A stretch of DNA of 64,000 bases from Octopus sinensis (Eukaryota). Positions 2,376-62,572 of this stretch are shown here, piece by piece. The notes under the pieces were generated by a model. The model saw only the letters and a program-made list of their open reading frames with translations. It had not been told where the DNA came from and did no database searches. Every line of letters begins with the position of its first letter. Position 1 is the first letter of the stretch. Made by a program: the position numbers and the translations under genes. The stretch spans positions 39,804,001-39,868,000 of the forward strand of contig NC_043013.1 of NCBI RefSeq assembly GCF_006345805.1, given 5' to 3'.

Positions 2376-4140
2376 GGAGGGTGGAGCTGTAGTGGTGTGG
2401 CGCGCGGACCTCTATAGGGCCGAGGCTTTCCGCCAACTCAATGACACCTCCTTCTATTCCCCTCTGCCCTCTAACCCCACACGTAGCTACCAACAGACGG
2501 TATCCTCTACCGTCCAAGACCTCATCTCGTCCTCCTCTCCCCCGCACCGCATCCAACCTAATTGTGCGAACCCCACGTACCCCCACCATTTACTTCCTCC
2601 CCAAAATCCACAAACCCAACAACCCTGGCCGCCCCATCGTCTCCGCCTGTAACTGCCCCACGGAGCTCATCTCTAAATACCTCGACCGTGTCCTTGCCCC
2701 CCTAGTGGCATCTCTTCCCTCCCACATCCACGATACCAACCATGCTCTCCGGCTTTTCAACTCTTTCTCCTTTCCTCCCGGCTCCTCCAAAATCCTTTTT
2801 ACTATGGACATCCGAAGCCTCTATACTGTTATCCCTCACCACGAAGGACTGCAGGCCCTTCGACACTTTCTTGACCTCCGCTCTAACCCTGTACCTGACA
2901 CCTCCACACTCATTCGTCTGGCCGAACTTGTCCTTACTCTGAACTGCTTCTCGTTCGCGGGCGAGTTCTACCATCAGTCTCGGGAGTGGCCATGGGAACG
3001 CGAATGGGCCCCAACTATGCGAACCTGTTCGTTGGCTATGTTGAGGCCCAAATATTCTCTAATTTCACTGGTCCCACTCCTGAACTATATGGTCGTTATA
3101 TTGACGACATTATCGTGCCACCTCACTCTCCTGCGAACATCTAGATTCCTTCCTCTCTTTCGTCCAATCTTTCCATCCAGCCCTCCACTTCACTTCCACT
3201 ATCTCCAACACCTCTGTCTCCTTCCTCGACATTTCAGTTAGCATTCTTCACTCCACTCTTACCACCTCCATTCACTACAAACACACAGACTCACACTCAT
3301 ACCTCAACTTCTCTTCCTCCCACCCAGAACACACCAAGCTTTCCATCCCCTATTCCCAATTCCTCGCGTCTACGTAGGCTCTGTAGTGACGACCATGACT
3401 TTGATACTCAGTCTCAACGTATGGCTCACCACTTCACCCTACGTGGATACCCCCTCACCACTATCCACACCGCCCTTGCCAGAGCACGGTCCGTGGACCG
3501 TGTATCTGCTCTCTCTCCCCGAACCCGCCCTGTAGTCTCCCGCCTCCCTTTTCCCCTCACTTACCACCCCACGACCCTACGTCTCCAACGCACCATTCTT
3601 CGAGCTTTCCGTCATCTCCAGTCCGACCCGTCCACTTCACACCTCTTCCCTAACCGACCCCTCCCCTCTTTCAAACGAGCCCACACAACCTTCGAGACCT
3701 TTTGGTACATAGCTCCTTCCCTGACCCTACCTCCCAACCCGGCTCGTTCCCCTGCTCCCGCCCACGTTGCCGCACTTGCCCTTACCTCTCCAACACCACC
3801 CGCCTCACTAGCACCCACCATCGACCCTATCCCATCATCCACTCCTTCACCTGCACCTCCAGCAATATTATCTATTGCATCTCTTGCTCTCTCTGCAATT
3901 CCTTGTACATCGGACAAACGGGACGCCGCTTGGCTGACCGGTTCGCGGAACACCTTCGTGACATCCACCTTGCGAACGACACACCGGTCTCACGCCATTT
4001 CCGCTCCACCGGTCACTCCTTGCAACACCTATCTGTGTTCGGTTTGTCCTTACACAGAGGCCATCCGGATTCCCGTTTGCGCCGCGGTGAACGGAATTAA
4101 TCTTCTCTCTTCGCTCTTATACGCCATTTGGTCTCAACTC
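2376..4140 (+). pseudogene. Frameshifted PLE RT/GIY-YIG reading frame
   Basis: ORF-track pieces 2197..2652, 2441..3241, 3421.. and 3702..4100 join into one PLE protein across about six 1-2 bp indels. Confidence 0.9.
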
Positions 4141-5009
4141 TCCCCCCCTCCTCATCTACCACCCCCCTCTCCCACCTCCTCACCTATCCTTTCTCCCCCC
4201 GACCCCTACTTCTTCAGTCCTTCATCCTTTCACCCCTACTCGCCTTCCTTCTTCCCTCTTTCTCCCTCCCTCTTCCCCTTCCTCTGCTCCCTCACTCCCT
4301 CTCTCTCCCCTCTCCCTCTTTCCTCCTTCATCCCCCTCCTCCCCTTCCTTCTCCCCCTTCCTCTCCTCTTCCCTCTTCTCCTCCCCCTCTTCTTCCCCTC
4401 CCCTTTCTCCCCCCCTCTTCCCCCTCCCCCTCTTCTCCCCCTCCCCCTCTTCTCCTCACTACACCACATGACTTTACACATCACATCACATATGATGTGC
4501 CATACTAATACACACACAACTAATACATACTAATACGTACTAATACATACTAGTACATACTAATACTTACACCAACCTATACATACACACGTCCAGACCC
4601 CGCATACGCACTTATACTCTCTCACACACACACACCACACATACCTATACATACCAATACGTACTAATACATACTAATAATACTAATACATACACCAACC
4701 CCATACATACGCATGTCCAGACCAATCTTACGCACTAATACTCTCTCATACACACACACACACACACACACACCCTTATACATACTAATACATACACCAA
4801 CCCTATACATACACACATCCAGACCCCTCCCACGCACTTTTAGCTGGTCCCTCAACCCATTTATCAACCCTATTATCTCCCCTTATTTCGCTCTCGCATC
4901 TCATGTTTGATCTTTGACCTCTGGCCGAAATCAGATCGCCATGTTGATTCGTTAGCTACTGCACGCATTTTTTTCTCTCCTTCTTTCTGTGTTTTTCTCT
5001 CTCTGTGTA

Positions 5010-5047
5010 TCTTTCTGTTGAAGAGCGTAGGCTCGAAACGTTAAAGA
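5010..5047 (+). ncRNA. Minimal type I hammerhead-like motif with variant core in the PLE 3' repeat
   Basis: UCUUU-CUGUUGA-A-GAGC(GUAG)GCUC-GAA-ACGU-U-AAAGA. Stem I UCUUU/AAAGA, stem II GAGC/GCUC, palindromic ACGU stem III. A6 is replaced by U. Confidence 0.6.
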
Positions 5048-5325
5048 CTTGTTTTATTTATATTTCCTGAGCGCCATACTAATACAATTGTTCGTTTGTT
5101 TTCCACCTGCCTTCGTCTTTTGTTTATTTTCATAAAGCTTCCCGTTATATATATATATATACATACATATATATATATATATATATACTTAAATGCCGAT
5201 CGATGAATATGAGTGCTTAGCTGCGCATTGTTGGGACAGAATGTCTTTATTTTTGCATTAAGGCTACCATTGGTTTCCTGCTAGGAAAAATATATTAAAA
5301 TTTTAATCATTCAAGCCGATCACAT

Positions 5326-12559: not shown

Positions 12560-13815
12560 GTACATTATTTACATATTTAGTAACCAGAGTATGGTTACTT
12601 TCTCGTTTCTGTGACTTTTTCTGGCGTGTGCCTATACCATCTTATTTTCTGTTGTTATTCCATAGTGTTGGCATAGCTTCCAGTGTATGCAGGTCCCAAC
12701 TCTGTCGTGTCTGTGAATATATTCCTTCTTAGCCAGGACTGGGCAACCAGAGATAATATGATTTATTGTTTCTTGTCCATCTCCACATATTCTGCAGTTA
12801 CTTGTTATGTTTCTTTTCATTATATATTTTTGGTAATTTCTGGTGGGGAGGCTTTGGTCTTCTGCTGCAATTAAAATTCCTTCAGTCTCTGCTTTGAGTC
12901 CTGAGCTTCTCAACCATTGCTGGTATTTTTCTTTGTCTATTTCTTTTGCATTTAGTTTTGACCAGTATTTGCCATGAAGGGGCTGTTCTTGACATCATGG
13001 TCCGTTGTTGTTGTAGTTTTAGTTTGGATTTCATTTGTTTTATAGCTTTTGTTTCTTCTTCTTCTTCTTCTTCTTCTTCTTCTTCTTCTTCTTCTTCTTC
13101 TTCTTCGTCTTCTTCTGCATATTTGTTAGGTAGTATGACTTCTTGTTTGTATTTGTCATCTTCATTAAATACTGCAAACAGTTTTTTTTTGTTTTCCTTG
13201 TGTTTTGTGGCTATTTGTATTAGTTTTCCTTGCTTCTGAAGTAGGTATTTTCGAAGTCCTATGGTGGTTATTTTATAATAGTTTTCTAGCTGTATAAGTT
13301 CTCTACCACCTTCTATACGTTGTATAAATAGCCTTTCTATGTCAGATTTTGGGTGGTGCATCCTAGATCCTGTCATTATTTTTCTTGTTTTCCTGTCTAT
13401 TTTGATTAGTTCATTTAGTGTCCAGTTAAGCATAATGTAGCTGTAACTTATAACTGGGACAGCTAAAGTGCTAATGCCTATTATCTTGTTTTTAGCATTG
13501 AGCGCTGTTTTCAGTATTGATCTAACTCGTCTATAGTATTCTTTCTTTATTTTCTTTTTCGTTTGTGTGTGTTGTATCATATCTAGTTCATTGATTCCTA
13601 AATATTTGTATGTCTGGCTTTGGTCTAATTTTCTTATTCCATTGGCTTTATCTAGTGTGACGTTGCTACTATTAACTAGTTTTCCTTTTTTCAGGGTTGC
13701 TTTGGCACATTTTTCTAATCCAAATTTCATATCTATTTCTTTGGTAAATCTATGTACTGTCTGTTGTAGTGTTTCCAGCCGTTTATCATTTGCAGCGTAT
13801 AGTTTTAGTCCTCCA

Positions 13816-13816
<1 letters not shown>
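12560..13816 (-). mobile_element. R4/Dong-clade non-LTR retrotransposon fragment (RT C-terminus + CCHC/RHD region)
   Basis: KFGLEKCA, YKYLGI, GLKAETEG.LIAA.DQ.L.TRNY, CRICG...ETINHI.SGCP.LA...Y..RHD. Confidence 0.9.
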
Positions 13817-13853
<37 letters not shown>

Positions 13854-13869
13854 TATTATTATTATTATT

Positions 13870-15230
13870 CAGGTCACTGCCTGGAATCGTACTCAAAATC
13901 TTGGGGTTAGCAGTGATCAGTTTGTCGAGTTCCTTGAGGACATTACTCAGATCACTGACAGTGGCTCATGGGTGGATGTTGTCTACCTTGACTTTGCTAA
14001 GGCTTTTAATTCTGTGCCACACAAAAGGCCTATGGTGAAACTCTCTGCAATGGGTGTGAGGGATGATCTTTTTAACTGGTTGAAATCCTTCATTCTCAGC
14101 CGAAAGGAGGTAGTCACAGTTCTAGGACAGCATTCTACACCATATGAGATGTCATCGGGTGTACCACAGGGATCTGTTCTTGGTCCCCTCTTGTGTGTGG
14201 AATACATTAATGACATAGATGCCAATTTAAAGAATACCACAGTATTGAAATATGCAGACGACATCAAGCTGTACCTTGAAATCAAGAGGACAGATCCTGA
14301 TATCTACAACTCTTTCCTGCAATCAGACCTGGACACAGTGCAGCAATGGATCACGGACTGGCAACTGAAACTGGCTGTGGACAAGTGTACCACCATGCAT
14401 TTTGGGAGAAAAAACCCTACGTCCACATACTCCCTCCACAACACTGATATCAAGAAATCCTCTTGCGAGCGTGACCTAGGCATCACTGTCAGCAGTGATT
14501 TGCGTTGGACAAAGCATATCTCTAAAATTGTCAAAAAGGCCGAGGGTGTCTTGGCATCACTCAGCAAGACTTTTGTTAGCCGCTCTCCAGCCATCTATTT
14601 AAAGCTGTCTACAGCTATGGTACGACCACACTTGGAATTTGCATAATCAGTTTGGAACCCCTATCTTGCTCAGAACATTGGCCTCCTGGAATCTGTTCAG
14701 AGACGTGCAACCAAACGCATACCCTCCATCAGACACCTACCATACTCTGAGCGCCTTGTTTCCCTGGGCATGGATTCACTGAAGCTCCGGCGTCTGGCGA
14801 TGGACTTGGTAAAAACCCACAAAGTTATCAACCACCTCACCAACAACAACACTGAACACCTTTTTATCTCCATGTGTCCAACACACGTGGACATGCCTAC
14901 AAAGTCAGAAAACAGCACAGCTCCCATGACTTTCGGAAACATTTTTTCACGCTCAGAGTTGCTGAAACATGGAACAAACTGCCTGCGTCAGTTGTTGACT
15001 GCCATGACACTGCATCCTTTAAGGCCCTCATGCTTTCCGAAATCCGCCGAAACTACACCTGATTGTCCCCCTTCCATACTCATACACATATGTGTATGTT
15101 ATGACTCATGCACTGTTCTTTTCCTGACGCTTGTACATTACCCTATGTACTATACATACACTTTAGATGAGTTGTAGTGCACCTGAGCACTGTACACAAT
15201 GTTTTATTATATTATTATTATTATTATTCA
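13870..15230 (+). mobile_element. 5'-truncated CR1-clade LINE (RT domain + 3' UTR)
   Basis: VDVVYLDFAKAF, SGVPQGSVLGPLL, YADD (14251-14262), ERDLGI, VRPHLEF. Flanked by (ATT)n on both sides. Confidence 0.92.
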
Positions 15231-29680: not shown

Positions 29681-29934
29681 TCATAAATGAGGGTGAAAAT
29701 TAGATATTAATTTAATAATTATTATGCATATGTATATATATATATATATACAAATTAGTAAATAAATGGCACAACAAAGTACCGATATTACTGGAAATAG
29801 CGAACGTAAAAATACGACGCTAAAGTGTAGCTTCACCACGTATGTATTAGTAAAAATGCGTGTGTGCAACAAAATAGAGAAAAAAAACCGTCTTACCTCC
29901 AGGGAGAACATCTGAGATGAAACACCCGGAAAAT

Positions 29935-30020
29935 GGATAATGTGGTACCTGCAGGTTTCAGTTTTTGCAAGATATGTTCTCTCACCCATATTTGCTTACC
30001 TTCTTCAGCCAAACATATAC
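29935..30020 (-). ncRNA. Type I hammerhead ribozyme, array copy 1
   Basis: CUGAAGA core, GAAA, palindromic stem III ACCUGCAGGU, cleavage triplet GUA. One mismatch in the basal stem II (AGGU/AACU). Confidence 0.8.
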
Positions 30021-30365
30021 CAAGACGAAACTACGATGTTACCACATAAATACTAACACACTCGACTGAAATACGGAACGCTAACAGTACGAGAAACGGT
30101 GAAGAAGTTTCAAAATATCAGTAATGCAATACAAAGTATTGCCTTCCAGTAAAAAGTAGCCCGTGAGGGAAAAATACACAAATTAGTAAATAAATGGCAC
30201 AACAAAGTACCGATATTTACTGGAAATAGCGAACGTAAAAATACGACGCTAAAGTGTAGCTTCACCGCGTATGTATTAGTAAAAATGCGTGTGTGCAACA
30301 AAATAGAGAAAAAAAACCGTCTTACCTCCAGGGAGAACATCTGAAAGATGAAACACCCGGAAAAT

Positions 30366-30451
30366 GGATAATGTGGTACCTGCAGGTTTCAGGTTTTGCA
30401 AGATATGTCTCTCACCCATATTTGCTTTACCTTCTTCAGCCAAACATATAC
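30366..30451 (-). ncRNA. Type I hammerhead ribozyme, array copy 2
   Basis: UAUGUUUGG-CUGAAGA-AGGU AAA GCAA AUAUG(GGUGAGAGA)CAUAU C UUGC AAA ACCU-GAA-ACCUGCAGGU-A-CCACAU. The canonical core is complete and all three stems pair. Confidence 0.88.
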
Positions 30452-30728
30452 CAAGACGAAACTACGATGTTACCACATAAATACTAACACACTCGACTGA
30501 AATACGGAACGCTAACAGTACGAGAAAGGTGGTGAAGAGTTTCAAAATATCAGTAATGCAATACAAAGTATTGCCTTCCAGTAAAAAGTAGCCGTGAGGG
30601 AAAAATACACAAATTAGTAAATAAATGGCACAACATAAATGAGGGTGAAAATTAGATATAATTTAATAATACCGTCAGTTTAACACCAAGTGGCCTACCA
30701 CATAGAAACCAGGGAGACAGTACAAATT

Positions 30729-42479: not shown

Positions 42480-44398
42480 TGGATACTGACACTACCATCA
42501 AGGAGCTTGACCCACAAAGAACGTATACATACATGAGGATAAACGAAGGAGATAGTATACAACATGCTACTGTTGTGGCACTCCGTCGGTTACGACGACG
42601 AGGGTTCCAGTTGATCCGATCAACAGAACAGCCTGCTCATGAAATTAATGTGCAAGTGACTGAGCACTCCACAGACACGTGAACCTTTAATGTAGTTCTC
42701 GGGGAGATTCAGCGTGACACAGATTCTGACAACGCTGGCCTTTTGAAATAAAGGTACAACAGAAACAAGAAGAAAGAGTGAGAGAAAGTTGTGATGAAAG
42801 AGTACAGCAGAGTTCGCCACCATCCCCTGCCTCGTGGATATTTAGGTGTTTTCGCACTCACAACGGCCGGTCTGGGGATCGAAACCGCGATCCCACGACC
42901 GCGAGTTCGATGCCCTAAATACTGGGCCATTGTGTCTCCACAACATGCTACTATAAAGGAAAAAATAAGAAAGGAGGTTTACGGGAGAATAATACCCATA
43001 CTAAAAACCGAACACAACTCCAAAAATTGCATCGAAGCCATTAACAACCTGGCACTTCCAGTAGTCCAACATCATTAACTGGGATATTACAAAACTCCAA
43101 CGCCTGGATAGGAAGACAAGAAAACTACTAACATCTAAGAAATAGCACCACCCAGAAGCAGACGTTGATTGTCTGTCTAGAAGTAATGGGAGAAGAGGAA
43201 TGATGCAGGTAGAACTGTGCTATAAGACCTCCACAATAGTAATGAACAAGCACTTAAGTGGCACAGTGGACTGGATGCTGCGGCTTGTGTGCAAATACGA
43301 AAGTAGCAAAAAATCACATTTGATTGTCAAGGAAGCTTGCAAATTTGCAAGTGAACTTGGCATTAACCCTGAATTAAATGAAGAACCTGAAACCACTGCC
43401 ACGAAAATAGCAAAACGTATCTAAAGACTGCAAAAAAGAACGGGTAGAAACAAATTGAGGAGCGGTGGTACCAGAAGCCTCTGAATGGACAGCATATACT
43501 TCGAAGCCGAAAAGCTAATGTCGACCAAGCAACAACCCATCAGTGGCTGAGAAGCTTAGGATTGAAAGCAGAGACTGAAGGTTTCATATTGGCGGCACAA
43601 GATCAAAGCTTGCTTACAAAAAAAACTACCTGGCTAACGTTCTACAGAATGGCTCTAGCCCTAAATGCAGATTCTACGATAAATTTGATGAAGCAATAGA
43701 CCATCACGTCTCAGGTTGTCCTCTGCTGACACCAAACGAATACAAAATTCTCCACGATAGGGTAGGACAGTATTTACATTGGAAAATACGTAAACACTAC
43801 AAAATCAGCACTCCTGCTTACTGGTGTGACTATCATCTTGAGCCAGTCGTTAAAGGTAAAAACGTCACTATCCTCTGGGATTTTCCAGCGAACACCGACA
43901 TAACGATACAGGCTAATCGACCAGACATAGTCATTAAAGATCAGGAAGAAAATGCTTGTAGACTAATAGATGTAAGTAATCCTACTGATACAAATATATC
44001 TGTAAAGGAATTTGACAAATTAAGTAAATTTAAGGACCTGGAAATTGAAATACAAAATATGTGGCATCTTAAAGCGAGAACTGCTCCTGTTATTGTGGGT
44101 GCCCTTGGTATGATAAGAAATGGATGTCAGAAACATCTAGATTATATCCCAGGAGAACCATGTCTCAGAGAAATCCAAAAGATTTTGCTGACAAGTACTG
44201 CCCACAACCTTAGAAAAACCTTATCAATTTAAATGTAGGTATTTCGCTACATGAAGATATTTCACTACAACCCTTATCATTTGCTCTCTCGAAGTTTTCA
44301 GTCATGTTGTAACATCTCTTATCCTTCACTCACCCTAGGACGTTGGGTGTGTCTCCGTGAGTGATTCTAACAAACATGCAGATTAAAAGTAGAAAATA

Positions 44399-55385: not shown

Positions 55386-55669
55386 ATGAAATACATACAT
55401 ATATACAAACACACGCCTGTGTATGTATGTATGTGTAAATATATAAGTTTGTGTGTATGTCTGTGCCCGTTGTTTGAGTTTGTGTATAACATTTGGTGTG
55501 GTTGCTGGGGGGGGGAGTTTGTTAGGGTTTTTTTGTGGTTTTTTCTTCATGTTTTCTAATTTTTTGTTTGATTCTTTTCAAAAATACACTTTTATCTTTG
55601 ATGGATGGTTTTGTTCCGTTTAATCAATTCTTCACCTAAGGCCGTTGTTTCCCTTATCATTACGGTGAT

Positions 55670-56720
55670 GGATATGATGCTGATGATGATGATGAGGAGG
55701 AGGATGCGGAACTTGGTGGTGGTGGTGGTGGTGGTGGTGGTGATACTTGTGGTTATGAATTTGGTGGTGGTGTTGGTGGCGTTGATTGTGGTGGTGTAAT
55801 GGTAGTAGTTGCACCAGCTCTGAGAGGTTTTGTATGGTTATCGTTGCAGTGTTGGCATAGGTGGCTTGTTGGTTTATCTCTTGCTTGGGGCCGATGGTTG
55901 TAATATTTTTGTTGTCGGTGGTGGTGGTGGTGGTGGTTGTGGTGGTGGTGGTGATACTTGTGGTTATGAATTTGGTGGTGGTGTTGGTGGCGTGATTGTG
56001 GTGGTGTAATGGTAGTAGTTGCACCAGCTCTGAGAGGTTTTGTATGGTTATCGTTGCAGTGTTGGCATAGGTGGCTTGGTGGTTTATCTCTTGCTTGGGG
56101 CCGATGGTTGTAATATTTTTGTTGTCGGTGGTGGTGGTGGTGGTGGTGGTCGTCGTCGTCGTCATCGTCGTCGTAATGGTGCTGGTGGTGGTGATAATGG
56201 TGCTGTTGAAGGTGGTTGTGGTTGTGATGGTACTTGTGGTGCAATAATGGTGGTGGTGCAATAATGGTGATGGTGGTTGTGGTGGCGGTATTTCTGTTGC
56301 CGCTGCTGTTACTGCTGCTGCCGCTAAGTGGTTCTGGTGGTAGTGCTGGGGTTGTTGGAGGAGCTGGTTGTGGTTGCGGTTGCGGTGGTGGTGGTGGTGG
56401 TGGTACTGGTTGTTATTGATGTTGTTGCTGATGGAGGTGGGGTGGCGGTGCTGGTGCTGGTGCTGGTGGCGATCGTAGTGCTGGTAGAGCTGATGGTGGC
56501 GGTGCTGATGGTGGTGTTGGTGAGGGTGGTGGGGGTTGTGGTGGTGGTGGTGGTTGTGGTGGTGGTGGTTGTGATGGTGGTGGTGATGTTTATCTGACAA
56601 CATGTCTGGTGTTGTTGAGTCATCTGCTATCTTATATTCATCAGGTTTCATCAGACGCAGACTAGAATAAAGCTAAAATAGATACGACAATAACAACAAC
56701 AACAACAGCAACAACAACAA
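55670..56720. repeat. (GGT/GAT/GCT)n low-complexity tract with an internal 211-bp tandem duplication
   Basis: The unit TGATACTTGTGGTTATGAATTTGG... recurs at 55741 and 55952. Confidence 0.9.
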
Positions 56721-61432: not shown

Positions 61433-62572
61433 TATGTTTGACTTTTGCTTTATGTCTGTACAAGTTGGCTCCAAGTCTCACCCAGAGACCTCAAGAGACA
61501 ACAGGTTGGACGTTCACGTTGTTGTTATGCCTAGTGTGCCATATATTTGGGGTTTTTTTGGTGTTGTACTAGTGAATGTCTAATAAATAAATTAGAAAAA
61601 AAAAGTTTGTTTTAAACATTGGGATTATATAGAAAGTATTTTGCGTAGGATATGAGCAGTTCCCATGAGCACTATCTTTTGAATTTCTGCCATTTGGGGG
61701 TTTCCTGGTATCTGAGTTAGGTAGCAATCAGCCCCTTCCGCTATCATTCCCAGGGCACCTATGACAACAGGTATTGTTTTAGTCTTCAGGTTCCACATTT
61801 TGCTGATTTCTATTTCAAGATCTTTATATTTGCTCAGTTTTTGGTAGGTCCTGACAGATACGTTTATATCGATTGGGACAGTCATATCAATGAGGAGGCA
61901 TGTTCTTTGTCTGGAGTCTTTCAATATGATGTCTGGCCTATTTGCATTTATCTTTCTGTCAGTTTGAATGGTGAAGTTCCAGAGGAGTGAGATGTGGTCA
62001 TTTTCAAGCACTGGAGGTGGATTGTGTTCCCACCGGTTTTTTTCATGGGGCAAATCCAGGTTTTTGCAAATTACCCAGAGAATATATTGTGCAGCTCTAT
62101 CATGCCTGTTGAGGTACTCTGTAGGCGCTAGAAGACTGCATTTGGAGACAACATGATCAATGGTTTCATTTTGTTGTCGGCATACACGACATGTTGGGCT
62201 ACTGCCGTTCTTTAATATGTTGGCCTGATAGTTTCTTGTTGGTAGGCATTGATCTTGAGCTGCTATGATAAACCCTTCTGTTTCAGATTTTAAGCCAGAG
62301 GCCATTAGCCATTGATGGGTCAGGGCTTTGTCAATATCTGCATTATTCGCTCTCTTTGGCTATTTGCCATAGAGAAGTTTTTCTTGCCATTTATTATTCA
62401 GAGTATCTAAGGCCGCAGTTTTGGCACGGGTTTTCATTCGCCTAGCTTTTTCTGTGCTTGTTTCTTGTATGTCTATCTCTAATTCCGAAATTTGTTGTAT
62501 TCGGAATTCACTTAGATATTCCTTTGCCGGTTTTGTTACTGAGTATGATGCTTTCTTGTTTTCATGTTTTGA
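61432..62572 (-). mobile_element. R4/Dong-clade LINE 3' fragment with an uninterrupted 226-aa CCHC/RLE C-terminus
   Basis: ORF 61625..62305: CRVC...ETIDHV...C, RHD, NRPDI, IDMTVP, KYKDL, PVVIGALG. (ATT)n on both sides. Confidence 0.95.

What the first reader, a model, noticed from the sequence alone, without database searches (positions are those of the whole stretch)
29751..30633. Retrozyme-like tandem array: a canonical hammerhead in each ~430-bp monomer predicts release of a 431-nt RNA
Seen: ~2.05 head-to-tail non-coding units. Each has, on the minus strand, the complete HHR core (CUGAAGA...GAAA...GUA), a palindromic stem III (ACCUGCAGGU) and a bulged stem I. Stem II is unusually long: AGGU/ACCU, an AAA/AAA internal loop, GCAA/UUGC, AUAUG/CAUAU and a 9-nt loop. 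Predicted cleavage falls 3' of the A at 30377 and at 29946, giving a 431-nt monomer. Established: animal retrozymes are tandem type I HHR repeats that yield circular RNAs and are thought to use PLE machinery. Inference: this is a retrozyme-like family in a probable cephalopod with a large monomer and extended stem II, lying in the same window as a PLE. I cannot confirm that it is undescribed.
Basis: partly seen in the sequence, partly recalled or inferred. Interest (0 to 1): 0.92.

Follow-up and report, generated by a model that had tools for sequence, protein, structure and literature searches.

The report
Hammerhead-bearing mobile repeat in octopus-like genome
The 890-bp "tandem array" is one decaying insertion of a young, roughly 200-copy family of non-coding jumping elements that carry a self-cleaving hammerhead RNA motif and insert the way Penelope-like retrotransposons do; it is a new example of a known kind (animal "retrozymes"), not a new kind.

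Summary
Window 29746-30635 (minus strand) contains 2.1 head-to-tail copies of a 431-bp unit. Each of the two hammerhead-bearing copies has a complete hammerhead core, and the predicted cleavage sites are 431 nt apart. The second hammerhead carries three changes in stem II.

The array is not a local satellite. It is one insertion of a dispersed family with about 200 or more 3' junctions in a 2.72-Gb genome. Insertions have a fixed 3' end that runs into (TA)n and variable 5' ends. About a quarter carry an upstream inverted 5'-truncated copy with a roughly 60-nt one-sided "tail". The window copy has a 37/38-bp target-site duplication. These are the published hallmarks of Penelope-like-element (PLE) integration.

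The RNA polarity implied by 5' truncation is the hammerhead polarity. Three subfamilies keep the core and show compensatory changes in the long stem II.

Rfam models do not score the motif, and its stem II closes with A-U rather than G-C. As a single copy it is not the preferred fold, so it probably acts as a double hammerhead. The insertions show almost no footprint of in vivo cleavage.

No sequence-related autonomous partner was found. An abundant PLE with intact ORFs that also ends in (TA)n coexists in the genome.

Verdict: new member of the metazoan non-LTR retrozyme class. Catalysis and circular RNA are untested.

The parts
29746..30635 (-). Whole insertion: unit positions about 173-431, then 1-431, then 1 to about 200 (2 units plus about 30 nt)
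   Evidence: TRF; BLAST of the unit against the locus
30377..30635 (-). 5'-truncated first unit (unit 173-431), carrying hammerhead copy 1
29946..30376 (-). Complete 431-nt unit between the two predicted cleavage sites. It differs from the family consensus at 3 positions, all in stem II of its hammerhead
29746..29945 (-). 3' partial unit (unit 1 to about 200). The element proper ends ...ACUAAUUUGU at 29750 and runs into (TA)n
30366..30452 (-). Hammerhead copy 1, identical to the family consensus: stem I, CUGAAGA, 13-bp interrupted stem II, GAAA, ACCUGCAGGU, A17
29935..30021 (-). Hammerhead copy 2: intact core, three changes in stem II (11.3 C-to-A, one A lost from the internal loop, one A gained in the terminal loop)
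30376..30377 (-). Predicted cleavage site 1 (3' of A30377, before C30376)
   Evidence: sequence; not tested biochemically
29945..29946 (-). Predicted cleavage site 2 (3' of A29946, before C29945)
   Evidence: sequence; not tested biochemically
30634..30670 (-). Upstream copy of the target-site duplication (37 nt)
29682..29719 (-). Downstream copy of the target-site duplication (38 nt; one extra A)
29720..29749 (-). TA-rich filler or tail, (TA)7 CATATGCATAATA, between the element's 3' end and the downstream duplication copy

Best explanation
The array is one dead-on-arrival insertion of a young family of non-autonomous, non-coding retroelements. The family is built from a 431-nt unit with one type I hammerhead motif per unit. 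That makes it a non-LTR retrozyme in the sense of Cervera & de la Pena 2020.

Shown here:
- The family is dispersed.
- Its RNA intermediate has the hammerhead's polarity.
- Every sense copy has a fixed 3' end (unit 199 or 204) joined to (TA)n and a variable 5' end. Copies are longer than one unit (1.07 to more than 5 units).
- About a quarter have an adjacent inverted 5'-truncated copy ending about 60 nt further along the unit.
- This is the insertion signature described for Penelope-like elements.

Inferred:
- Multi-unit transcripts fold so that the palindromic ACCUGCAGGU segments of two hammerheads pair into a 10-bp stem III (a double hammerhead). They then cut 3' of A17 and release 431-nt RNAs with 5'-OH and 2',3'-cyclic phosphate ends.
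- By analogy with other animal retrozymes, a tRNA-ligase-type enzyme circularises these RNAs.
- A PLE reverse transcriptase/GIY-YIG endonuclease nicks (TA)n.
- The (TA)n 3'-OH pairs with UGUAU at unit 199-203, with a G-T wobble that explains the G200-to-A change in most terminal units.
- Reverse transcription then runs round a template longer than one unit, either circular or an uncleaved multimer. It often stops at unit 49-61, just 3' of a strong hairpin.
- The second target strand sometimes primes a second, inverted copy.

In this locus only the upstream hammerhead is intact. The locus is more likely a fossil than a source of RNA circles.
For: Family and dispersal:
- 139 matched pieces, 93-99% identical, on many contigs.
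- 185 junctions of the class joining (TA)n at unit 199 at one mismatch or fewer. At least 27 further exact junctions join at unit 204.
- 189 exact hammerhead pattern hits against 0 in the reversed control.

Insertion architecture:
- All 24 sense 3' ends abut (TA)n.
- 5' ends are variable. Inverted copies were seen in 6 of 23 sequenced loci and 11 of about 45 listed arrays. They always end at unit 262-265 and are always paired with a sense copy.
- The window has a 37/38-bp duplication.
- Craig et al. 2021 (PMC8557442) list 5' truncation, partial tandems, an adjacent inverted 5'-truncated copy, a one-sided tail and microsatellite bias as PLE features not seen with LINE integration.

Template longer than the priming site:
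- Two junction registers, 199 and 204, occur across subfamilies.
- Within-array substitutions are 1.3% against 2.3% between arrays.
- 29 of 102 array-private variants are shared between units of the same array.

Hammerhead:
- One descriptor hit in the window against 0 in 60 shuffles.
- Three subfamilies keep the core. They differ at N7 (A/U) and H17 (A/C) and by compensatory changes in stem II. Pairing is 94.8% against 13-44% with slid partners. Two pairs switch between G-C and A-U, one goes to G-U, and a bulged C becomes a G-C pair.
- Stem II appears in the unconstrained MFE. The MFE of two copies is a double hammerhead with a 10-bp stem III.
- The sense circular monomer has z = -5.2 against shuffles. 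The antisense strand is unremarkable.

Machinery:
- PLE RT has 7,667 first-look candidates. Many are 98% identical, with ORFs up to 1,009 aa.
- One intact copy has RT, a C-x4-C-x2-C linker and GIY-YIG. It ends in (TA)n and sits in a partial tandem.

Class description: PMC7229834.
Against: - No Rfam hammerhead model scores the motif at gathering threshold or at E <= 10, even for the subfamily with canonical CUGAUGA...GUC. The same model does find compact hammerheads elsewhere in this genome.
- Stem II closes with A10.1-U11.1. Perreault et al..1-11.1 the most conserved stem pair after 15.1-16.1, and the usual pair there is G-C.
- The single-copy hammerhead fold (-14.8 kcal/mol) loses to an alternative fold (-20.3). 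The dimerisation gain is no better than for shuffled sequences (43 of 100).
- Only 1 of 37 arrays begins exactly at the predicted cleavage site.
- Mutations after insertion are neither depleted nor enriched in the hammerhead (31 observed, 30.1 expected), so copies give no evidence of selection.
- Covariation rests on few independent events, and part of the set was gathered with a pattern that fixed the core.
- No autonomous element shares sequence with the unit.
- No expression or circular-RNA data could be consulted.
Confidence: 0.75

Rival explanations
1. Same mobile family and same PLE-type integration, but the hammerhead-like motif no longer cleaves (or never did in this form). Under this reading the template is an ordinary linear read-through transcript that starts near unit 55 of one unit and ends in the (UA)n after unit 199 of a later unit. 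The element is then a PLE-dependent SINE-like repeat with mini pseudo-LTRs, not a circle-forming retrozyme.
For: - 10 of 37 arrays start at unit 49-61 (about 1.1 expected; Poisson p about 3e-7, my calculation).
- The commonest complete form is about 580 nt, with a 149-nt terminal direct repeat.
- Almost no insertions start at the cleavage site.
- Rfam misses the motif.
- Stem II closes with A-U, and the monomer fold is disfavoured.
- Craig et al. note that hammerheads are dispensable for PLE proliferation.
Against: - The core is intact in the consensus of three subfamilies that differ at about 10 other hammerhead positions, with compensatory stem II changes.
- The sense RNA is unusually structured, z = -5.2.
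- Two junction registers (199 and 204) across subfamilies argue for priming inside a continuing template rather than an inherited terminus.
- Published animal retrozymes with weak stem III do cleave as dimers (PMC7229834).
Confidence: 0.2
2. A SINE-like element mobilised by a LINE that uses microsatellite-tailed 3' ends. The tandem units would come from dimerisation, and the hammerhead would be incidental.
For: LINE-type RT fragments are present in the window (13537-15174; zf-RVT ORFs at 43579-44232 and 61625-62359). A simple-repeat 3' tail is known for some LINE/SINE pairs (my knowledge).
Against: - Adjacent inverted 5'-truncated copies with a one-sided tail, and partial tandems, are described as PLE-specific and not seen in LINE integration.
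- There is no tRNA, 5S or 7SL head: Rfam finds nothing in the unit.
- The PLE family in the same genome ends in (TA)n in just the same way.
Confidence: 0.04
3. A local tandem duplication or satellite made by replication slippage or unequal crossing-over, with a chance hammerhead-like motif.
For: Only about 2 copies at this locus. The surroundings are rich in microsatellites.
Against: - About 200 or more dispersed insertions share the same 3' end and have variable 5' ends.
- A 37/38-bp target-site duplication flanks this copy.
- The motif is absent from 60 shuffles and from the reversed-pattern control genome-wide.
Confidence: 0.01

Closest known systems
Metazoan non-LTR retrozymes (Cervera & de la Pena 2020, NAR, PMC7229834), e.g. 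the Mytilus galloprovincialis 350-390 bp repeats
   Same: Short head-to-tail repeats of 150-450 bp. One type I hammerhead per unit. Low GC (38% here). No ORF, LTR, PBS or PPT. Target-site duplications much longer than 4 bp. Mollusc host. Proposed dependence on PLE machinery.
   Different: - The host appears to be a cephalopod, and I found no cephalopod example in the searchable literature.
- Stem II is 13 bp, interrupted by an A-rich internal loop and closed by A-U. Rfam models miss it.
- Insertions are short (1-5 units) and strictly tied to (TA)n.
- Expression and circularity are unknown here.
Newt satellite 2 / axolotl HHR_Amex1 hammerheads (dimeric type I)
   Same: Weak helix III capped by a palindromic loop. 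The single motif is predicted or known to be poor. Two tandem copies can form an extended helix III (double hammerhead).
   Different: The amphibian motifs have a compact stem II with the classical loop 1-loop 2 contacts and reach 10^5 copies in long arrays. Here stem III has 3 bp plus UGCA, stem II is long, and there are only about 200-300 insertions.
Minimal hammerheads in pseudo-LTRs of Penelope-like elements (Cervera & de la Pena 2014, PMC4209133; dimeric variants reported by Lunse et al. 2017, from memory)
   Same: Type I topology, tiny palindromic stem III, association with PLE-type insertions. The PLE in this genome carries such a motif (ACGU stem III).
   Different: The 431-nt family's hammerhead is not minimal. 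It has long stems I and II and shares no sequence with the PLE examined. That PLE's motif has U at core position 6.
Schistosoma Sm-alpha (SINE-like element with a type I hammerhead)
   Same: A non-autonomous dispersed repeat that carries a type I hammerhead in an invertebrate.
   Different: Sm-alpha is described as SINE-like with a compact, efficient monomeric hammerhead. Here the junctions are PLE-type and the ribozyme probably needs dimerisation.
Plant LTR retrozymes (Cervera et al. 2016, PMC4918200)
   Same: Non-autonomous retroelement whose hammerheads delimit an RNA thought to circularise and act as the transposition intermediate.
   Different: The plant elements have type III hammerheads inside real LTRs, a PBS and PPT, 4-bp duplications, high GC, and use LTR-retrotransposon machinery.

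Membership tests
Hammerhead ribozyme, type I | Conserved core C3 U4 G5 A6 N7 G8 A9 / G12 A13 A14 / A15.1-U16.1 / H17 (not G) | tested here: met
   CUGAAGA...GAAA...GUA in both window copies. The consensus of all three subfamilies keeps it, with N7 = A or U and H17 = A or C.
Hammerhead ribozyme, type I | Three helices around the core, with stems II and III closed and stem I open | tested here: met
   Descriptor hit, 0 in 60 shuffles. Stems II and III are 94.8% paired across 23 variants, against 13-44% with slid partners, with 2 compensatory pairs. Stem I has 10 bp with bulges.
Hammerhead ribozyme, type I | Stem II closed by the consensus G10.1-C11.1 pair | tested here: not met
   A10.1-U11.1 in all 23 variants. 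A Watson-Crick pair is kept. Natural active hammerheads with U-U at this position exist (PMC3088659; axolotl HHR_Amex2), so this departs from consensus rather than excluding membership.
Hammerhead ribozyme, type I | Scores at or above the gathering threshold of a curated Rfam hammerhead model | tested here: not met
   No hit at gathering or at E <= 10, in the window or in the canonical-core subfamily. The same model finds 7 compact hammerheads elsewhere in the genome.
Hammerhead ribozyme, type I | Mg2+-dependent self-cleavage 3' of H17 | not testable with these tools
   Needs in vitro transcription and cleavage assays.
Hammerhead ribozyme, type I | Tertiary contact between stem I and stem II loops | not tested
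   A UU bulge in stem I and an AAA/AAA internal loop 4 bp into stem II are positioned where such contacts usually sit. This is inference only.
Metazoan non-LTR retrozyme | Head-to-tail repeats of 150-450 bp, each with a type I hammerhead | tested here: met
   431-bp period. Arrays have 1.07 to more than 5 units, with one motif per unit.
Metazoan non-LTR retrozyme | Low GC, non-coding, no LTR/PBS/PPT | tested here: met
   GC is 38%. The only ORF is a 76-codon frame, open in 8 of 29 units, with no Pfam match. There are no terminal repeats beyond the unit itself. PBS and PPT were not searched for specifically.
Metazoan non-LTR retrozyme | Dispersed copies with target-site duplications longer than 4 bp | tested here: met
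   About 200 or more junctions. A 37/38-bp duplication in the window. Elsewhere duplications are hidden in (TA)n.
Metazoan non-LTR retrozyme | Expressed as linear and circular RNA of unit length | not testable with these tools
   No transcriptome access. Only indirect support: the sense circular fold has z = -5.2.
PLE-type (Penelope-like) insertion | Frequent 5' truncation with a fixed 3' end | tested here: met
PLE-type (Penelope-like) insertion | Partial tandems | tested here: met
   Every sequenced insertion carries more than one unit length.
PLE-type (Penelope-like) insertion | Inverted 5'-truncated copy directly upstream | tested here: met
   6 of 23 sequenced loci and 11 of about 45 listed arrays.
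PLE-type (Penelope-like) insertion | Short extension ('tail') at one end only | tested here: met
   Inverted copies end at unit 262-265 and sense copies at 199/204. The extension is 59-63 nt, against the published 30-40 bp.
PLE-type (Penelope-like) insertion | Microsatellite insertion bias | tested here: met
   All 24 sense ends and all 6 inverted ends join (TA)n. The PLE in this genome does the same.
PLE-type (Penelope-like) insertion | Sequence homology of the unit to a PLE pseudo-LTR (as shown for Xenopus retrozymes, bioRxiv 10.64898/2026.07.22.740005) | tested here: not met
   Only one PLE family was examined. The local alignment is not significant (76 of 300 shuffles do as well). Only a 13-mer is shared. 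No hammerhead with the same stem III exists outside the family. Other PLE families in the genome were not examined.

The most novel reading that the evidence does not exclude
The family could give the first insertion-footprint evidence that an animal retrozyme is copied by PLE-type target-primed reverse transcription from a template longer than one unit, either a circle or an uncleaved multimer. The features are (TA)n-primed starts in two registers, inverted twin copies, a one-sided tail and arrays longer than one unit. Its hammerhead (A-U at 10.1-11.1, and a 13-bp stem II with an A-rich internal loop in place of loop 2) may also be an active structural variant outside all current Rfam hammerhead models.
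Probability: 0.3. Interest if true: 0.6.

Novelty: new member of a known kind. Interest (0 to 1): 0.45.

Why it matters
Animal retrozymes are thought to ride on Penelope-like elements. The published support for that is co-occurrence, shared ribozyme type and, in frogs, sequence similarity to pseudo-LTRs.

This family is young, has a low copy number and is cleanly bounded by (TA)n, so each insertion can be read base by base. The junctions show the PLE-specific architecture and suggest where priming occurs. That makes the mobilisation step directly testable.

It also extends the class to what appears to be a cephalopod. And it shows that curated covariance models miss hammerheads with long interrupted stem II, so genome surveys based on Rfam will undercount them.

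Tried and rejected
1. Rfam scans: no hammerhead hit. I kept this as evidence against 'canonical', not as proof of absence, because a descriptor scan and covariation support the motif.
2. Footprint of cleavage: I looked for insertions beginning at the cleavage site. A genome-wide pattern found only 2 insertions abutting (TA)n within -11 to +19 of it. A second apparent case (C2:128747144) actually starts at unit 403. There is no enrichment.
3. Mutation enrichment in the hammerhead. This was prompted by the window's middle unit, whose 3 differences all lie in stem II. It is not general: 31 substitutions observed against 30.1 expected.
4. Dimerisation energy as a test of the double hammerhead: the gain is no better than for shuffles.
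5. The window's PLE remnant as the partner: the alignment is not significant.
6. The RT at 13537-15174 as 'the PLE': it is a LINE-type RT.
7. 'Type C' hammerheads in inverted pairs as pseudo-LTRs of an autonomous element: they are just a diverged subfamily of the same unit inside a 2.1-kb segmental duplication.
8. A hammerhead with the same stem III but a short stem II elsewhere in the genome: none.
9. The two Rfam hits 431 bp apart on C16 as a compact-ribozyme relative: an unrelated element of about 340 bp, whose spacing is a coincidence.
10. Terminal against internal unit differences, as a test for a fixed linear master: none except the junction base.
The sample is therefore about 23 sequenced arrays plus the coordinate tables.
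Full report
**1. The observation**

Tandem Repeats Finder reports a single array at window 29746-30635, with period 431, 2.1 copies and 97% matches.

Read on the minus strand, the upstream hammerhead candidate occupies 30452-30366. It consists of:
- stem I 5' strand GGUAUAUGUUUGG
- core CUGAAGA
- stem II: AGGU/ACCU, AAA/AAA internal loop, GCAA/UUGC, one bulged C, AUAUG/CAUAU, 9-nt loop
- GAAA
- ACCUGCAGGU
- A17 at 30377, followed by CCACAUUAUCC, which pairs back to the 5' strand with bulges

The second candidate occupies 30021-29935, with A17 at 29946.

A descriptor requiring the core, stem II of at least 4 bp, stem III of at least 3 bp and stem I of at least 3 bp finds only copy 1 on either strand of the window. 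It finds nothing in 60 dinucleotide-preserving shuffles.

**2. What the array is**

The unit is not local. The window's genome (2.72 Gb, 13,516 contigs) gave 139 matching pieces, 93-99% identical, from only the 40 best-scored candidate regions.

| Whole-genome pattern scan | Result |
|---|---|
| 3' junctions of the common type, one mismatch or fewer | 185 |
| 3' junctions of a second type, exact | at least 27 |
| Exact hammerhead pattern hits | 189 (0 for the reversed control) |

I sequenced 23 arrays with flanks. In the hammerhead's orientation:
- Every array ends at unit position about 199-204 (...ACUAAUUUGU), and the next bases are (TA)n.
- The 5' end is variable.
- The length always exceeds one unit, from 1.07 to more than 5 units.
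- Six of the 23 have, directly upstream, an inverted 5'-truncated copy. Eleven of about 45 arrays in the coordinate table do.
- The outer end of each inverted copy is always at unit 262-265 and also joins (TA)n.
- Such copies never occur without a sense partner.

The window copy is flanked by a 37/38-bp direct repeat (30634-30670 and 29682-29719). A 26-30-nt TA-rich filler lies between the element's 3' end and the downstream repeat. Elsewhere, duplications cannot be read because both flanks are (TA)n.

The 'tandem array' is therefore a single retrotransposed insertion.

**3. Whose signature this is**

Craig et al. 2021 (PMC8557442) describe Penelope-like-element insertions as:
- highly 5'-truncated
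- organised in partial tandems
- with a 30-40-bp tail at one end
- with microsatellite bias, including (TA)n

They state that these structures are not observed with LINE integration. The family meets each point. Its tail is longer, at 59-63 nt.

The fixed-3'/truncated-5' polarity also shows that the RNA intermediate has the same sense as the hammerhead. This is independent support for the strand assignment.

**4. Clues to the template**

Most terminal units read ...UUUGU-AUAU (20 of 23 have A at unit 200, where internal units have G). A minority read ...UUUGUGUAU-AUAU and keep the internal sequence up to unit 204. The second register occurs next to hammerheads of subfamilies A, A' and B, so it is not a lineage marker.

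The simplest reading is that a (TA)n 3'-OH pairs with UGUAU (one G-T wobble) or with UAU a few bases on, inside a template that continues past that point. That template would be a multimer or a circle.

Microhomology alone does not choose the site, because the best UAUAU stretch of the unit (356-362) is never used.

Units within an array differ by 1.3% in substitutions, against 2.3% between arrays. Of 102 array-private variants, 29 are shared by two or more units of that array. This fits homogeneous templates but is not decisive with my sample.

Ten of 37 arrays start at unit 49, 55, 55, 56 or 61 (about 1.1 expected; Poisson p about 3e-7, my calculation). These positions lie just 3' of a predicted hairpin (unit 14-52) and at the start of a U8 run. 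They could be a reverse-transcription stop or a transcription start. I cannot tell which.

Only one array (C15:50173858) begins exactly at the predicted cleavage site.

**5. Is the hammerhead real?**

*For:*
- The core is complete.
- The hits fall into at least three subfamilies:
  - Subfamily A (the window's type): CUGAAGA, AGGU..ACCU, GCAA..UUGC, GUA.
  - Subfamily B: CUGAUGA, ACAA..UUGU, GUA or GUC.
  - Subfamily C: CUGAUGA, AGAU..AUCU, A[C/U]AA-G..C-UUGU, GUC.
- On 23 distinct variants, the proposed stems II and III are 94.8% paired, against 13-44% when partners are slid. Two pairs switch fully between G-C and A-U, one goes to G-U, and the bulged C becomes a G-C pair in subfamily C.
- The core positions that differ between subfamily consensus sequences are N7 and H17, the two positions a hammerhead tolerates.
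- Stem II appears in the unconstrained MFE.
- The sense circular monomer is far more structured than shuffles (-114.8 against -88.9 +/- 5.0 kcal/mol, z = -5.2). The antisense strand is ordinary (-87.2).

*Against:*
- Rfam models do not score the motif at gathering or at E <= 10, even for subfamily C. Yet RF00163 finds compact type I hammerheads elsewhere in this genome.
- Stem II closes with A-U. Perreault et al..1-11.1 the most conserved stem pair after 15.1-16.1, though active U-U variants exist and axolotl HHR_Amex2 has one.
- The single-copy hammerhead fold (-14.8) loses to an alternative fold (-20.3).
- Covariation rests on few events, and part of the variant set was gathered with a pattern that fixed the core.
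- Post-insertion mutations are neutral with respect to the motif: 31 observed against 30.1 expected.

**6. Likely mode of action**

Stem III has 3 bp plus a UGCA loop, and the whole ACCUGCAGGU is self-complementary. The MFE of two copies is a textbook double hammerhead:
- both stem IIs are present
- a 10-bp intermolecular stem III forms
- each stem I forms between the 5' strand of one copy and the 3' strand of the other

This is the mechanism established for newt and axolotl repeats. The energetic gain is no better than for shuffled homodimers, so this rests on the palindrome and on analogy.

In that mode the site at 29946|29945 would be served by the intact upstream core and stem II. The site at 30377|30376 would be served by the damaged downstream one. 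This locus is thus a poor candidate source of a 431-nt RNA.

**7. The partner**

The window does contain a PLE remnant (2393 to about 5145, plus strand), bounded by (TA)n. It is decayed, lies 26 kb away and is not significantly similar to the unit. The RT at 13537-15174 is LINE-type.

The PLE family is very abundant, with 7,667 first-look candidates. Many copies are 98% identical, with ORFs up to 1,009 aa. One intact-looking copy has the following features:
- RT motifs
- a C-x4-C-x2-C linker, which Craig et al. ascribe to Neptune/Nematis-type elements and discuss as a possible (TA)n reader
- a C-terminal GIY-YIG domain
- a 3' end directly followed by (TA)n
- a partial tandem arrangement

It shares the target or tail with the 431-nt family. 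It shares neither sequence nor ribozyme. Its own motif is CUGUUGAA-GAGC GUAG GCUC-GAAACGUU, with U at core position 6.

No hammerhead with the family's stem III exists outside the family. The PLE link is therefore shown by insertion architecture and co-occurrence, not by homology. Other PLE families in the genome were not examined.

**8. Comparison with what is known**

The class was defined by Cervera & de la Pena 2020:
- type I hammerheads in 150-450-bp tandem repeats
- low GC
- no LTR, PBS or PPT
- long target-site duplications
- circular RNAs
- mussel repeats of 350-390 bp

A 2026 preprint argues from co-occurrence and pseudo-LTR homology in vertebrates that these are PLE derivatives.

The 431-nt unit is within the published size range. 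Full-text searches found no cephalopod retrozyme or hammerhead report. Repbase and Dfam could not be checked.

This match is by size only. It would also explain the many homopolymer indels among copies.

**9. Verdict**

- It is a new member of a known kind.
- Its most useful aspect is the cleanly readable PLE-type insertion footprint.
- Catalysis, circular RNA and the identity of the partner remain open.

Noticed in passing
window 2393-5145 (+): Decayed Penelope-like element (RT motifs [16 protein letters not shown]; frameshifted endonuclease region), bounded by (TA)n on both sides. Its family is very abundant in the genome: 7,667 first-look candidates, many 98% identical, with ORFs up to 1,009 aa.
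   Followed up: partly
window 5015-5050 (+); L055 4439-4475: Hammerhead-like motif in the PLE 3' region: UCUUU CUGUUGAA GAGC-GUAG-GCUC GAAACGUU|AAAGA. It has a palindromic ACGU stem III and U instead of A at core position 6. It is identical in the decayed window copy and in an intact copy, so this is not private decay. Whether it is an active variant or a relic is unknown.
   Followed up: partly
window 13537-15174 (+): 5'-truncated LINE-type reverse transcriptase (RVT_1, 1e-24; YADD; C-terminal RRATK...YSERL...LGM.SL motif). It is not a PLE.
   Followed up: partly
window 61625-62359 (-) and 43579-44232 (+): Two related ORF fragments with a zinc-binding-in-RT motif (zf-RVT). They look like 3' parts of another non-LTR retrotransposon family, on opposite strands.
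   Followed up: no
L064 (G000:C16:25145900-25147300), L065 (C13:29988900-29989140), L066 (C5:60037620-60037860): Rfam RF00163 finds compact canonical type I hammerheads elsewhere in the genome. One is in an unrelated element of about 340 bp that also ends in (TA)n (CUGAAGAG-ACCC...GGGUC-GAAAC-AUGU-GUC). Its 431-bp spacing is a coincidence caused by the included microsatellite. Another is Schistosoma-like. Several hammerhead-bearing families coexist in this genome.
   Followed up: partly
unit positions 49-61 (window 30328-30316 and 29897-29885, minus strand): Preferred 5' end of insertions: 10 of 37 arrays, against about 1.1 expected. It lies just 3' of a predicted hairpin (unit 14-52) and at a U8 run. 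The commonest complete form is about 580 nt, with a 149-nt terminal direct repeat (a mini pseudo-LTR).
   Followed up: partly
unit positions 37-267 (window 30340-30110, minus strand): 76-codon ATG ORF in the family consensus. It is hydrophobic, open in only 8 of 29 units, and has no Pfam match. Probably chance.
   Followed up: yes
unit 96-108 (window 30281-30269, minus strand); window about 4519-4795 (+); L055 3945-4218: The 13-mer TACTAATACATAC of the unit equals the tandemly repeated motif in the PLE 3' UTR. A related TTTACTAAT lies at the unit's 3' end. It is statistically weak (E 0.09-0.95 per match) but could be a shared recognition motif.
   Followed up: no
L036 (G000:C2:111026400-111030400) and L054 (G000:C4:14920500-14925500): Insertions of the family lie inside recent segmental duplications (1.16-kb and 2.16-kb periods, 98.5% identical in L054). 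Some copies therefore multiplied by DNA duplication, not retrotransposition.
   Followed up: no
window 55632-56672 (-): 346-codon open frame made of His/Thr-rich low-complexity runs. It is microsatellite-derived and has no Pfam match.
   Followed up: no
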